The notes below the pieces were generated by a model, which saw nothing but the letters and a program-made list of their open reading frames with translations, had not been told where the DNA came from and did no database searches. Both the position numbers and the translations under genes were made by a program. 58,495 bases of DNA from Octopus bimaculoides (Eukaryota): assembly GCF_001194135.2 (NCBI RefSeq), contig NC_068987.1:19828132-19886626 (forward strand), read 5' to 3'. This document shows positions 30,273 through 30,701 of this stretch, piece by piece. Within the stretch, counting starts at the first letter, position 1; every line of letters begins with the position of its first letter.

Positions 30273-30701
30273 TAGTTGTATACTGCCAACTTAACATGAC
30301 AGTCCCAATAAGGGAATATACTACTGCTGTTTAGCCCTAGGAGGCCAGACCGTTTCCTATTAGGCCTTGACACATTTCCTGTGCCCTTATCCTTACAAAG
30401 GGGAGACAAACTCCTCCACCCAGCCTAGCCTGCATTCGGGGACATGTTTCTGAGTCTTTGCTCATCATCAGCCTGAAGTAGCATGACTGGCTAGATGAAG
30501 AAGTCTGTTTCACTCTCGTAAGGATATACTATTTCAGTGAAATACATAGGCTGGGTGGAGGAGTTTGTCTCCCCCTCGTAAGGATAAGGGCACAGGAAAT
30601 GTGTCAAGGCCTAATAGGAAGCGGTCTGGCTTCCTAGGGCTAAACAGCAGTAGTATATTCCCTTATTGGGACTGTCACGTTAAGTTGGCAGTATACAACT
30701 A
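30273..30701. mobile_element. Foldback element with 155-bp inverted arms and a hammerhead in the spacer (Penelope-like derivative)
   Basis: 30273-30427 is the reverse complement of 30547-30701 with about 5 transitions by my count; (TA)n on the left flank. Confidence 0.88.
30435..30477 (-). ncRNA. Type I hammerhead-like motif with complete core
   Basis: Minus strand: TTCAGG CTGATGA TGAG CAAAGA CTCA GAAA CATGTC CCCGAA; 4-bp stem II, palindromic ACATGT stem III, GUC triplet ending 30441, stem I 5 bp + one A.C. Confidence 0.8.

What the first reader, a model, noticed from the sequence alone, without database searches (positions are those of the whole stretch)
30273..30701. Foldback element: 155-bp perfect-type arms with an intact hammerhead in the loop
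Seen: the arms differ by about 5 transitions, and the 119-nt spacer holds a full-core hammerhead on the minus strand (CTGATGA-TGAG/CTCA-GAAA-CATGTC). A 12-mer CTCGTAAGGATA occurs in both the spacer and the right arm, hinting at a template switch. Established: Penelope-like elements often leave inverted partial terminal repeats carrying hammerheads. Inference: a minus-strand transcript would form about 155 bp of dsRNA whose loop self-cleaves, making it a candidate ADAR/Dicer substrate or a non-autonomous ribozyme-processed mobile RNA (retrozyme-like).
Basis: partly seen in the sequence, partly recalled or inferred. Interest (0 to 1): 0.85.

Follow-up and report, generated by a model that had tools for sequence, protein, structure and literature searches.

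The report
Head-to-head hammerhead retroelement remnant
This is most likely an old, solitary insertion of a hammerhead-ribozyme-carrying retroelement of the Penelope/retrozyme kind, laid down as two copies facing each other. That arrangement is a known habit of these elements, so the finding is real but fairly ordinary.

Summary
Two 155-nt arms (30273-30427, 30547-30701) are inverted copies differing by 5 transitions, around a 119-nt spacer. The minus strand of the spacer carries a complete type I hammerhead core (30477..30435, cut 30441|30440).

The hammerhead has the canonical metazoan layout. It also has a U-A pair at 10.1/11.1, one A.C mismatch in helix I, and a helix III too short to form in a monomer. 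It scores far below Rfam thresholds, and there is only one copy at the locus, so self-cleavage here is doubtful.

My reading is that this is not a foldback element. The left side (30546->30273, minus strand) is a 274-nt unit with the ribozyme at the tip of a long imperfect hairpin. The right arm is a second copy of the same 3' end, 5'-truncated and inverted. Penelope-like elements are known to insert this way, at AT-rich targets; a (TA)8 tract abuts the left end.

No reverse transcriptase or endonuclease remnant lies nearby. No other copy was found in the window or in any searchable collection, so copy number, ends, target-site duplication and host organism remain unknown.

Verdict: new member of a known kind, low to moderate interest.

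The parts
30273..30546 (-). Longer copy of the element; its sense strand is the window's minus strand. 274 nt: 5' segment, hairpin with hammerhead at its tip, then the 155-nt 3' region ending ...GGCAGTATACAACTA.
   Evidence: Sequence. Folds as a long imperfect hairpin plus small stem-loops, -101.1 kcal/mol, z = -7.1. GC 45% against 35-40% in the flanks.
30273..30427 (-). Left arm: the 3'-terminal 155 nt of the longer copy.
   Evidence: It carries derived changes relative to the right arm: two CpG to TpG changes, and two changes that break an AGGAAGC/GCTTCCT hairpin that is perfect in the right arm.
30547..30701 (+). Right arm: a second copy of the same 3'-terminal 155 nt in inverted orientation. 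It is 5'-truncated 13 nt downstream of the position equivalent to the ribozyme cut site.
   Evidence: 150/155 identical to the reverse complement of the left arm, with sharp outer and inner boundaries.
30435..30477 (-). Type I hammerhead motif: helix I (6 positions, 5 paired), core CUGAUGA, helix II UGAG/CUCA with loop CAAAGA, GAAA, palindromic ACAUGU helix III, GUC. Predicted cut between 30441 and 30440.
   Evidence: Sequence. Descriptor gives 1 hit against 0 in 300 shuffles. Rfam HH9 alignment, 21.2 bits. Architecture matches the 'canonical metazoan type I' description.
30489..30526 (-). Segment a': a diverged copy (79%) of the inner 38 nt of the arm. On the ribozyme strand it pairs with 30388-30425 and extends helix I into a ~50-bp imperfect stem.
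   Evidence: D6, I3; z = -4.7; on the minus strand 28 Watson-Crick + 7 G:U + 3 mismatches, -63.2 kcal/mol; on the plus strand 28 + 2 + 8, -48.2 kcal/mol.
30527..30546 (-). 5'-most 20 nt of the longer copy, holding a small hairpin (UUUCACUGAAA). It is the junction with the inverted partner.
   Evidence: No similarity elsewhere in the window.
30340..30468 (-). Short reading frame opening inside the ribozyme core: ATG at 30468 and again at 30465 (= A9-U10.1-G10.2). It is open for 42-43 codons to a TAG at 30339-30337, and the same stop is present in the right arm. Probably not coding.
   Evidence: Parallel: in the Anolis element the ORF starts at stem II, 26 nt before the cut. No real protein relative among 1.84 billion representatives.
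30254..30272 (.). (TA)8 microsatellite abutting the left end: a candidate AT-rich insertion target.
   Evidence: (TA)n tracts are very common in this window (77 tracts), so this is weak evidence.
30702..30759 (.). Unique 58 nt between the right arm and the next interspersed repeat, which starts with (TA)n at 30760. Could be host DNA or a PLE-type 'tail'; undecided.
   Evidence: 30760-31009 has copies at 33696-33930 and 56164-56437. Flank similarity is not significant: 8% of random windows score as high.

Best explanation
The locus is a fossil of one insertion event of a hammerhead-bearing, non-autonomous retroelement mobilised by Penelope-like machinery, that is, a solo retrozyme-like or pLTR-derived unit.

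Two copies of the element's 3' end were laid down head-to-head. Inferred mechanism: the endonuclease cut both strands of an AT-rich target, and each 3'-OH primed reverse transcription from the RNA's 3' end (...CAACUA). One cDNA ran 274 nt, through the ribozyme. The other stopped after 155 nt. The two 5' ends were joined at 30546|30547. That explains why the two outer ends are identical and sharp, and why the 'spacer' is simply the extra 5' part of the longer copy.

In the parent element the ribozyme sits at the tip of a long G:U-rich hairpin. Its palindromic helix III (ACAUGU) means it cuts as a dimer, in multimeric transcripts or with a partner RNA.

At this locus there is one ribozyme with a mismatch in helix I, so it is probably inactive or barely active. 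The locus's only likely present-day property is that a read-through transcript would form a ~155-bp duplex.

Shown: the anatomy, motif, strand asymmetry and lack of nearby coding remnants. Inferred: retro-origin, the double-priming mechanism and inactivity.
For: - Exact 155-nt arms with sharp outer and inner ends, 5 transitions.
- The ribozyme and segment a' lie only on the minus-strand copy and are contiguous with the left arm.
- Canonical metazoan type I hammerhead features: UAC bulge, 6-position helix I, 4-bp helix II, CAAAGA loop, short palindromic helix III (alignment; description in PMC4209133).
- The motif is not expected by chance: 0 in 300 shuffles.
- The helix I extension is better on the ribozyme strand, -63.2 vs -48.2 kcal/mol.
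- The element is a GC island: 46% against 35-40%.
- Literature: PLE insertions are 5'-truncated, often carry an inverted 5'-truncated copy, and prefer microsatellite or AT-rich targets (PMC8557442).
- A purified PLE cleaves and extends both strands, and reverse transcription initiates ~90 nt downstream of the ribozyme cut (PMC11167929). Here the 3' end is 168 nt downstream of the cut.
- Schistosoma has paired hammerheads 100-700 bp apart on opposite strands.
- Solo retrozyme monomers are common and dispersed, and retrozymes are related to PLE pLTRs (bioRxiv 10.64898/2026.07.22.740005).
- The 5 arm differences argue against a palindromic assembly artefact.
Against: - Only one copy could be examined. 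None was found elsewhere in the window, in viral, metagenome or prokaryote contigs, or through protein look-ups.
- No target-site duplication could be shown.
- No reverse transcriptase or GIY-YIG remnant among ORFs of at least 50 aa between about 20.4 and 36.2 kb, and no long ORF anywhere in the window.
- The ribozyme is of the canonical type, not the minimal type reported inside metazoan PLEs.
- It scores far below Rfam thresholds.
- 10.1/11.1 is U-A, whereas G-C is described as highly conserved.
- TA dinucleotides at both outer ends leave a DNA-transposon reading open.
Confidence: 0.55

Rival explanations
1. A miniature inverted-repeat (foldback) DNA transposon. It would have 153-155-bp terminal inverted repeats and a TA target duplication, move by a Tc1/mariner-like transposase, and happen to carry a hammerhead-derived sequence in its centre.
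For: Long, nearly identical terminal inverted repeats with sharp ends. The sequence can be read as TA|GTTGTATAC...GTATACAAC|TA. Size of 429 bp, AT-rich surroundings, and other foldbacks in the same window.
Against: TA is palindromic and part of the repeat, and the left flank is (TA)n, so the 'duplication' carries no information. The spacer continues one arm as a single folded RNA unit with strand-specific G:U pairing, which a DNA transposon does not need. Hammerheads of this type are known from retroelements and retrozymes. No second copy in 58 kb.
Confidence: 0.15
2. A rearranged fragment of a larger hammerhead repeat array or PLE terminal repeat. A tandem or partial-tandem insertion was later inverted or deleted by recombination between copies, leaving one and a half units in opposite orientation.
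For: Retrozymes and PLEs normally occur as tandems. The region is dense with repeats and microsatellites that could drive rearrangement. The arms are 3% diverged, so the structure is not young.
Against: Both arms end at exactly the same nucleotide and nothing of the element lies beyond them. This is what insertion termini give, not random recombination breakpoints. There is no direct repeat of the unit nearby.
Confidence: 0.1
3. A functional hairpin-RNA locus. The foldback itself would be the selected unit, with a transcript forming 155 bp of dsRNA (a source of small RNAs or an editing substrate) whose loop is opened by the ribozyme.
For: Very stable predicted duplex. The complete ribozyme core lies wholly within the loop. 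Core nucleotides are intact although the arms have taken 5 substitutions.
Against: No evidence of transcription is available. Helix III is too weak for a monomer, and this ribozyme design needs a partner. The active fold is 8.5 kcal/mol above the minimum-energy fold. Helix I has a mismatch. The arm differences are the ordinary decay type, two of them CpG to TpG. There is a single copy, with nothing to test conservation against.
Confidence: 0.07
4. An assembly artefact: a chimeric inverted join made while assembling short reads of a repeat.
For: The window is a gapped draft with 18 runs of N. PLE-type inverted structures are known to trouble short-read assemblies.
Against: The nearest gaps are at 24711-24814 and 33015-33132, so the element lies inside 8.2 kb of continuous sequence. 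The arms differ at 5 positions and surround an asymmetric 119-nt spacer, unlike a perfect artefactual palindrome.
Confidence: 0.05

Closest known systems
Non-LTR retrozymes of animals: tandem repeats with canonical type I hammerheads, expressed as small circular RNAs (Cervera & de la Pena 2020, PMC7229834)
   Same: Same ribozyme design: 6-position helix I, 4-bp helix II, short palindromic helix III that implies dimers. A unit of a few hundred nt (274 nt visible here), GC below 50%, and a highly self-paired predicted RNA. Solo monomers are known.
   Different: No tandem repeat here and only one ribozyme. It is paired instead with an inverted truncated copy. 10.1/11.1 is U-A. Expression and circularity are unknown.
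Penelope-like elements and their pseudo-LTRs (Evgen'ev & Arkhipova; Craig et al. 2021, PMC8557442; Frangieh et al. 2024, PMC11167929)
   Same: Hammerhead a short distance upstream of the insertion's 3' end. 5' truncation with an inverted 5'-truncated partner head-to-head. An AT-rich or microsatellite target. An ATG at the start of stem II, ~25 nt before the cut, as in the Anolis element.
   Different: No RT/GIY-YIG reading frame in the window. The ribozyme is canonical rather than the minimal PLE variant (long helix II, no helix III). No tail or target duplication could be demonstrated.
Rfam Hammerhead_HH9 (RF02275) and the Schistosoma/newt type I hammerheads
   Same: Collinear over the whole model. 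Shares the UAC bulge, CUGAUGA, the CAAAnA loop 2, GAAAC and GUC.
   Different: 21.2 bits against a threshold of 52. Helix III is far shorter, 10.1/11.1 is U-A, and there is one helix I mismatch. HH9 is a conserved single-copy intronic ribozyme of amniotes, not a repeat.
Foldback elements and MITEs with long terminal inverted repeats
   Same: Overall shape: two long inverted arms, a short centre and a small size.
   Different: No demonstrable target duplication, and no copies with the same ends. The centre continues one arm as a single RNA unit and carries a ribozyme.

Membership tests
Hammerhead ribozyme, type I | Conserved core: C3 U4 G5 A6 N7 G8 A9 ... G12 A13 A14 A15.1 ... U16.1 H17 | tested here: met
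   CUGAUGA / GAAA / U-C are all present on the minus strand, 30471-30441.
Hammerhead ribozyme, type I | Three helices around the core (I open-ended, II and III closed) | tested here: inconclusive
   Helix II has 4 bp. Helix I has 5 of 6 pairs plus a long extension. Helix III is only A-U and C-G around a 2-nt loop, which cannot form in a monomer. The palindrome ACAUGU would give 6 bp in a dimer.
Hammerhead ribozyme, type I | G10.1-C11.1 pair at the base of helix II | tested here: not met
   U10.1-A11.1. The pair is described as highly conserved, but U-U variants at this position cleave in axolotl and in bacterial examples.
Hammerhead ribozyme, type I | Score at or above an Rfam hammerhead gathering threshold | tested here: not met
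   No hit at gathering score. The best is HH9 at 21.2 bits against 52, seen only when 71 nt are searched.
Hammerhead ribozyme, type I | Site-specific self-cleavage | not testable with these tools
   Needs in vitro transcription of monomer and dimer constructs.
Non-LTR retrozyme | Tandem repeats (two or more units of ~150-450 bp), each with a type I hammerhead | tested here: not met
   One ribozyme and no direct repeat of the unit at the locus or elsewhere in the window. Solo monomers of such families are reported.
Non-LTR retrozyme | Low GC (<45-50%) and a highly self-paired RNA | tested here: met
   GC 45-46%. The 274-nt unit has z = -7.1, and a hypothetical circular form has z = -5.9.
Non-LTR retrozyme | Expressed as linear and circular RNA | not testable with these tools
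   No expression data available.
Penelope-like element insertion | Single ORF with telomerase-like RT and GIY-YIG endonuclease | tested here: not met
   No ORF of 90 aa or more that looks coding. No Pfam hit in ORFs of 50 aa or more between 20.4 and 36.2 kb. The rest of the window was not scanned with Pfam.
Penelope-like element insertion | 5'-truncated copy with an inverted 5'-truncated copy adjacent, giving inverted repeats | tested here: met
   A 274-nt copy and a 155-nt copy, head-to-head, share the same 3' end. The feature is as described.
Penelope-like element insertion | Hammerhead in the terminal repeat, upstream of the reverse-transcription start | tested here: met
   The cut site is 168 nt upstream of the shared 3' end. 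In the Anolis element the start lies ~90 nt after the cut, with an optional 30-40 nt tail.
Penelope-like element insertion | AT-rich or microsatellite target, variable target duplication, optional 30-40 bp tail | tested here: inconclusive
   (TA)8 abuts the left end. Flank similarity is not significant. The 58 nt at 30702-30759 are of unknown origin.
MITE / foldback DNA transposon | Terminal inverted repeats flanked by a fixed-length target-site duplication | tested here: inconclusive
   Inverted repeats are present. The only candidate duplication is the palindromic TA, which is part of the repeat and next to (TA)n.
MITE / foldback DNA transposon | Many copies with the same two ends | not testable with these tools
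   No second copy in the window. The source genome is not searchable here.

The most novel reading that the evidence does not exclude
The foldback is a recurrent, selected architecture. It would be a class of hammerhead retroelement, or a host hairpin-RNA gene derived from one, in which long dsRNA arms and a ribozyme-bearing loop work together. For example, the ribozyme could open the loop to release a long dsRNA for small-RNA production or editing.

A related possibility concerns the cluster of A-to-G differences in the helix I extension (GGCTAGATGAAGAAG vs GGCTGGGTGGAGGAG). It could be an RNA-editing footprint fixed in DNA by reverse transcription.
Probability: 0.06. Interest if true: 0.65.

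Novelty: new member of a known kind. Interest (0 to 1): 0.25.

Why it matters
If the reading is right, the locus is one more example of how hammerhead-bearing retroelements insert: both strands primed, copies joined head-to-head. It shows a ribozyme variant with U-A at 10.1/11.1 and a start codon inside the core, set at the tip of a G:U-rich hairpin.

That has modest value for cataloguing such families in an animal genome that could not be identified here. It also suggests that long inverted repeats in repeat-rich genomes should be checked for this origin before being called foldback transposons or hairpin-RNA genes. It does not open a new question by itself.

Tried and rejected
Searches for other copies, all negative:
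- blastn of the element against the window.
- Exact look-up of two ORFs inside the element.
- Protein word-index search with the arm ORF.
- Ribozyme pattern in viral and metagenome contigs.
- Arm 20-mer in metagenomes and a shorter ribozyme pattern in prokaryote genomes. These gave only isolated 20-40-nt chance matches.
- Full-text search of papers for the ribozyme sequence.

Test of a PLE-ORF link: an exhaustive HMMER search with the reading frame that opens in the ribozyme gave one hit at E = 2.8e-4. It proved to be the translation of an unrelated 162-bp satellite with no hammerhead.

Organism identification failed. I tried a protein search with an ORF of the abundant SINE-like repeat, a paper search for that repeat's sequence, tRNA search and Rfam on the whole window. 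The repeats reminded me of cephalopod genomes, but that is memory only and is not used in the argument.

Target-site duplication: there is none directly adjacent. The similarity between 30244-30265 and 30749-30771 is matched or beaten by 8% of random windows.

Fold-back priming at the short a/a' inverted repeat after a DNA break was rejected. It would copy past 30273 into the left flank and would not give the right arm its own copy of segment a.

A second CTGATGA...GAAA at 23591-23526 shares TTGTAAGGATA with the arm. It was judged chance: its 'helix II' is mostly G:T, there is no collinearity, and blastn finds nothing.

Full report
**1. What is there**

The window is AT-rich (34.5% GC), full of microsatellites and interspersed repeats, and has 18 assembly gaps. 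It has no tRNA, no Rfam hit at gathering score and no long coding-looking ORF. It looks like a draft animal genome, but I could not identify the organism.

The feature lies inside 8.2 kb of gap-free sequence, 24815-33014. The repeat finder reports an inverted repeat at 30267-30427 / 30547-30707, 96% over 161 nt, 119 nt apart. Base by base, the arms are exactly 155 nt (30273-30427 and 30547-30701) and 150/155 complementary. All five differences are transitions. Identity collapses immediately outside both outer ends and inside both inner ends. A transcript of either strand would fold into this duplex; the minus strand gives -329.7 kcal/mol, z = -34.

**2. The hammerhead**

On the minus strand the spacer reads UUCAGG-CUGAUGA-UGAG-CAAAGA-CUCA-GAAA-CAUG-UC|CCCGAA, spanning 30477 to 35.

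The evidence that it is real:
- A descriptor for the published canonical animal type I design finds this single hit and none in 300 dinucleotide shuffles. The design is helix I of 6 with at most one mismatch, helix II of 4, a short helix III, and UH. A looser version expects 0.007 per window. The descriptor was written after the motif was seen.
- Rfam is much less generous. It gives nothing at gathering score and no hammerhead at E<=10 in a 701-nt search.
- When only 71 nt are searched, Rfam gives a full-length alignment to Hammerhead_HH9: 21.2 bits against a threshold of 52, E = 0.0013. Scaled to the whole window that E-value would be about 1.
- The alignment is still informative. It lines up features the descriptor did not ask for: the UAC bulge 5' of helix I, the CAAAnA loop 2 and GAAAC...GUC.
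- These match the description of canonical metazoan hammerheads: helix I 6 bp, helix II 4 bp, loops that interact, and helix III 1-2 bp with a 2-4-nt palindromic loop (PMC4209133).

Deviations from the consensus:
- 10.1/11.1 is U-A, where G-C is called highly conserved. U-U variants at that position do cleave.
- Helix I has one A.C mismatch.
- Helix III (A-U, C-G, 2-nt loop) cannot close in a monomer. ACAUGU is a perfect palindrome, the signature of ribozymes that act as dimers.
- Monomers of such ribozymes cleave poorly, 6-22% per hour in axolotl, while dimers cleave well.
- In nearest-neighbour terms the active fold is 8.5 kcal/mol above the minimum-energy fold.

So the core is intact, but self-cleavage of a lone copy is doubtful.

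**3. The spacer is not a neutral loop**

Segment a' is 79% identical to the inner end of the right arm and 74% complementary to the inner end of the left arm (D6, I3).

On the ribozyme strand a' pairs with 30388-30425 and prolongs helix I into a ~50-bp imperfect stem with the ribozyme at its tip (z = -4.7). Of the 10 non-Watson-Crick positions, 7 are G:U on the minus strand and only 2 on the plus strand. The energies are -63.2 and -48.2 kcal/mol. This is suggestive of an RNA structure on the ribozyme strand but not statistically decisive (about 0.09 one-sided).

Taken together, 30546->30273 on the minus strand is one 274-nt unit that folds well (z = -7.1). It runs: 20 nt, a', ribozyme, then the 155-nt 3' region. 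The right arm is a second copy of that 3' region alone. It begins 13 nt after the position equivalent to the cut site and sits in inverted orientation.

The right arm looks closer to the ancestral sequence. It keeps two CpGs that are TpG in the left arm, one of which is also kept in a'. It also keeps a perfect AGGAAGC/GCTTCCT hairpin that is broken twice in the left arm. The differences are therefore ordinary post-insertion decay. The element is CpG-depleted, with 6 observed against 22.8 expected, and is a GC island relative to its flanks.

**4. Explanation**

Two copies sharing exactly the same 3' end, facing each other, with their variably truncated 5' ends joined in the middle, is the structure described for Penelope-like elements. 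Their insertions are heavily 5'-truncated, often accompanied by an inverted 5'-truncated copy, and biased to microsatellites such as (TA)n (PMC8557442).

A purified element from Anolis cleaves and extends both strands of an AT-rich target, unlike R2 or L1. It starts reverse transcription ~90 nt downstream of the hammerhead cut. Its ORF starts at stem II, 26 nt before the cut (PMC11167929).

Here the shared 3' end is 168 nt downstream of the cut and a (TA)8 tract abuts the left end. An ATG sits at A9-U10.1-G10.2, 25 nt before the cut, which may explain the unusual U10.1. That frame stops after 42-43 codons in both arms and has no real relative among 1.84 billion representative proteins.

In Schistosoma, hammerheads 100-700 bp apart on opposite strands were noted. 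The ribozyme type here is that of animal non-LTR retrozymes, which a 2026 preprint relates to PLE pseudo-LTRs and finds frequently as dispersed solo monomers.

I therefore read the locus as a single old insertion of a PLE-mobilised, hammerhead-bearing non-autonomous element, laid down head-to-head.

**5. What argues against, and the rivals**

- I could not find any other copy, so fixed ends, copy number and covariation are untested.
- No target-site duplication could be shown.
- No RT or endonuclease remnant was found within about 6-10 kb on either side.
- A MITE with long inverted repeats and a TA duplication cannot be excluded, because TA is palindromic and lies next to (TA)n.
- Fold-back priming at a/a' after a DNA break is rejected, because it predicts copying into the left flank and no separate copy of segment a in the right arm.
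- An assembly palindrome is unlikely given five arm differences and an asymmetric spacer.
- A selected hairpin-RNA function is possible but has no positive evidence.

**6. Verdict**

The locus is best filed as working like a PLE or retrozyme-type insertion. Its membership is incomplete: there is no tandem repeat, no ORF, and it scores below Rfam thresholds. Novelty: a new member of a known kind. Interest: about 0.25.

Noticed in passing
window 30489-30503 vs 30549-30563 (and 30411-30425): Four A/G differences in 15 nt (GGCTAGATGAAGAAG vs GGCTGGGTGGAGGAG). All give G:U pairs on the ribozyme strand. This could be structure-preserving drift, or an A-to-I editing footprint fixed by reverse transcription. 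Both arms carry the G form.
   Followed up: partly
window 30463-30468 (minus strand): Two ATGs overlap the hammerhead core, and the second is A9-U10.1-G10.2. They open a 42-43-codon frame 25-28 nt before the cut site. This resembles the Anolis Penelope element, whose ORF starts at stem II. The frame has a stop in both arms and no real protein relative.
   Followed up: yes
window 18596-18791; also 38900-39078/39798-39976 and more than 20 other sites (e.g. 4067-4443, 19866-20197, 27495-27865): An abundant SINE-like repeat (...GTCATTTGACTGTGGCCATGCTGGAGCACC...) ending in (TA)n or (CA)n tracts. At 18596-18791 two copies meet end-to-end across a (TA)n tract, giving an 84-nt, 93% foldback with a 28-nt spacer. 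Inverted pairs of repeats are therefore common in this window.
   Followed up: partly
window 26860-27446, 29311-29749, 32660-33013: Another repeat family with internal 66-67-bp tandem units. One copy, just 550 bp left of the finding, carries a 52-nt, 94% hairpin (29604-29655 / 29675-29726, 19-nt loop). 29311-29595 and 32660-32946 are 92% identical.
   Followed up: no
window 2991-3197: A separate foldback: 92-nt arms, 83% complementary, 23-nt spacer. Unrelated in sequence to the finding.
   Followed up: no
window 30760-31009: Directly right of the finding lies a further interspersed repeat starting with (TA)n. It has diverged copies at 33696-33930 and 56164-56437 (67-88%). It includes a 26-bp tandem duplication at 30799-30848.
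   Followed up: partly
window 23526-23591 (minus strand): A second CTGATGA...GAAA pair followed by CACTTGTAAGGATA, which shares 11 nt with the arm of the finding. Its 'helix II' is mostly G:T and there is no wider similarity, so it was judged chance.
   Followed up: yes
window 1-407: The window starts with ~400 nt of (TA)n-based low-complexity sequence that is self-complementary throughout (many overlapping 70-73% palindromic pairs).
   Followed up: no
L020 1977-5431 (ENA metagenome contig ERZ25071824:ctg63940): The only protein hit for the ribozyme-frame peptide is the translation of a 162-bp satellite: 21 copies, 96% alike, called as two genes of 476 and 458 aa. No hammerhead and no Rfam hit. 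It is a false lead, and an example of a satellite annotated as protein.
   Followed up: yes
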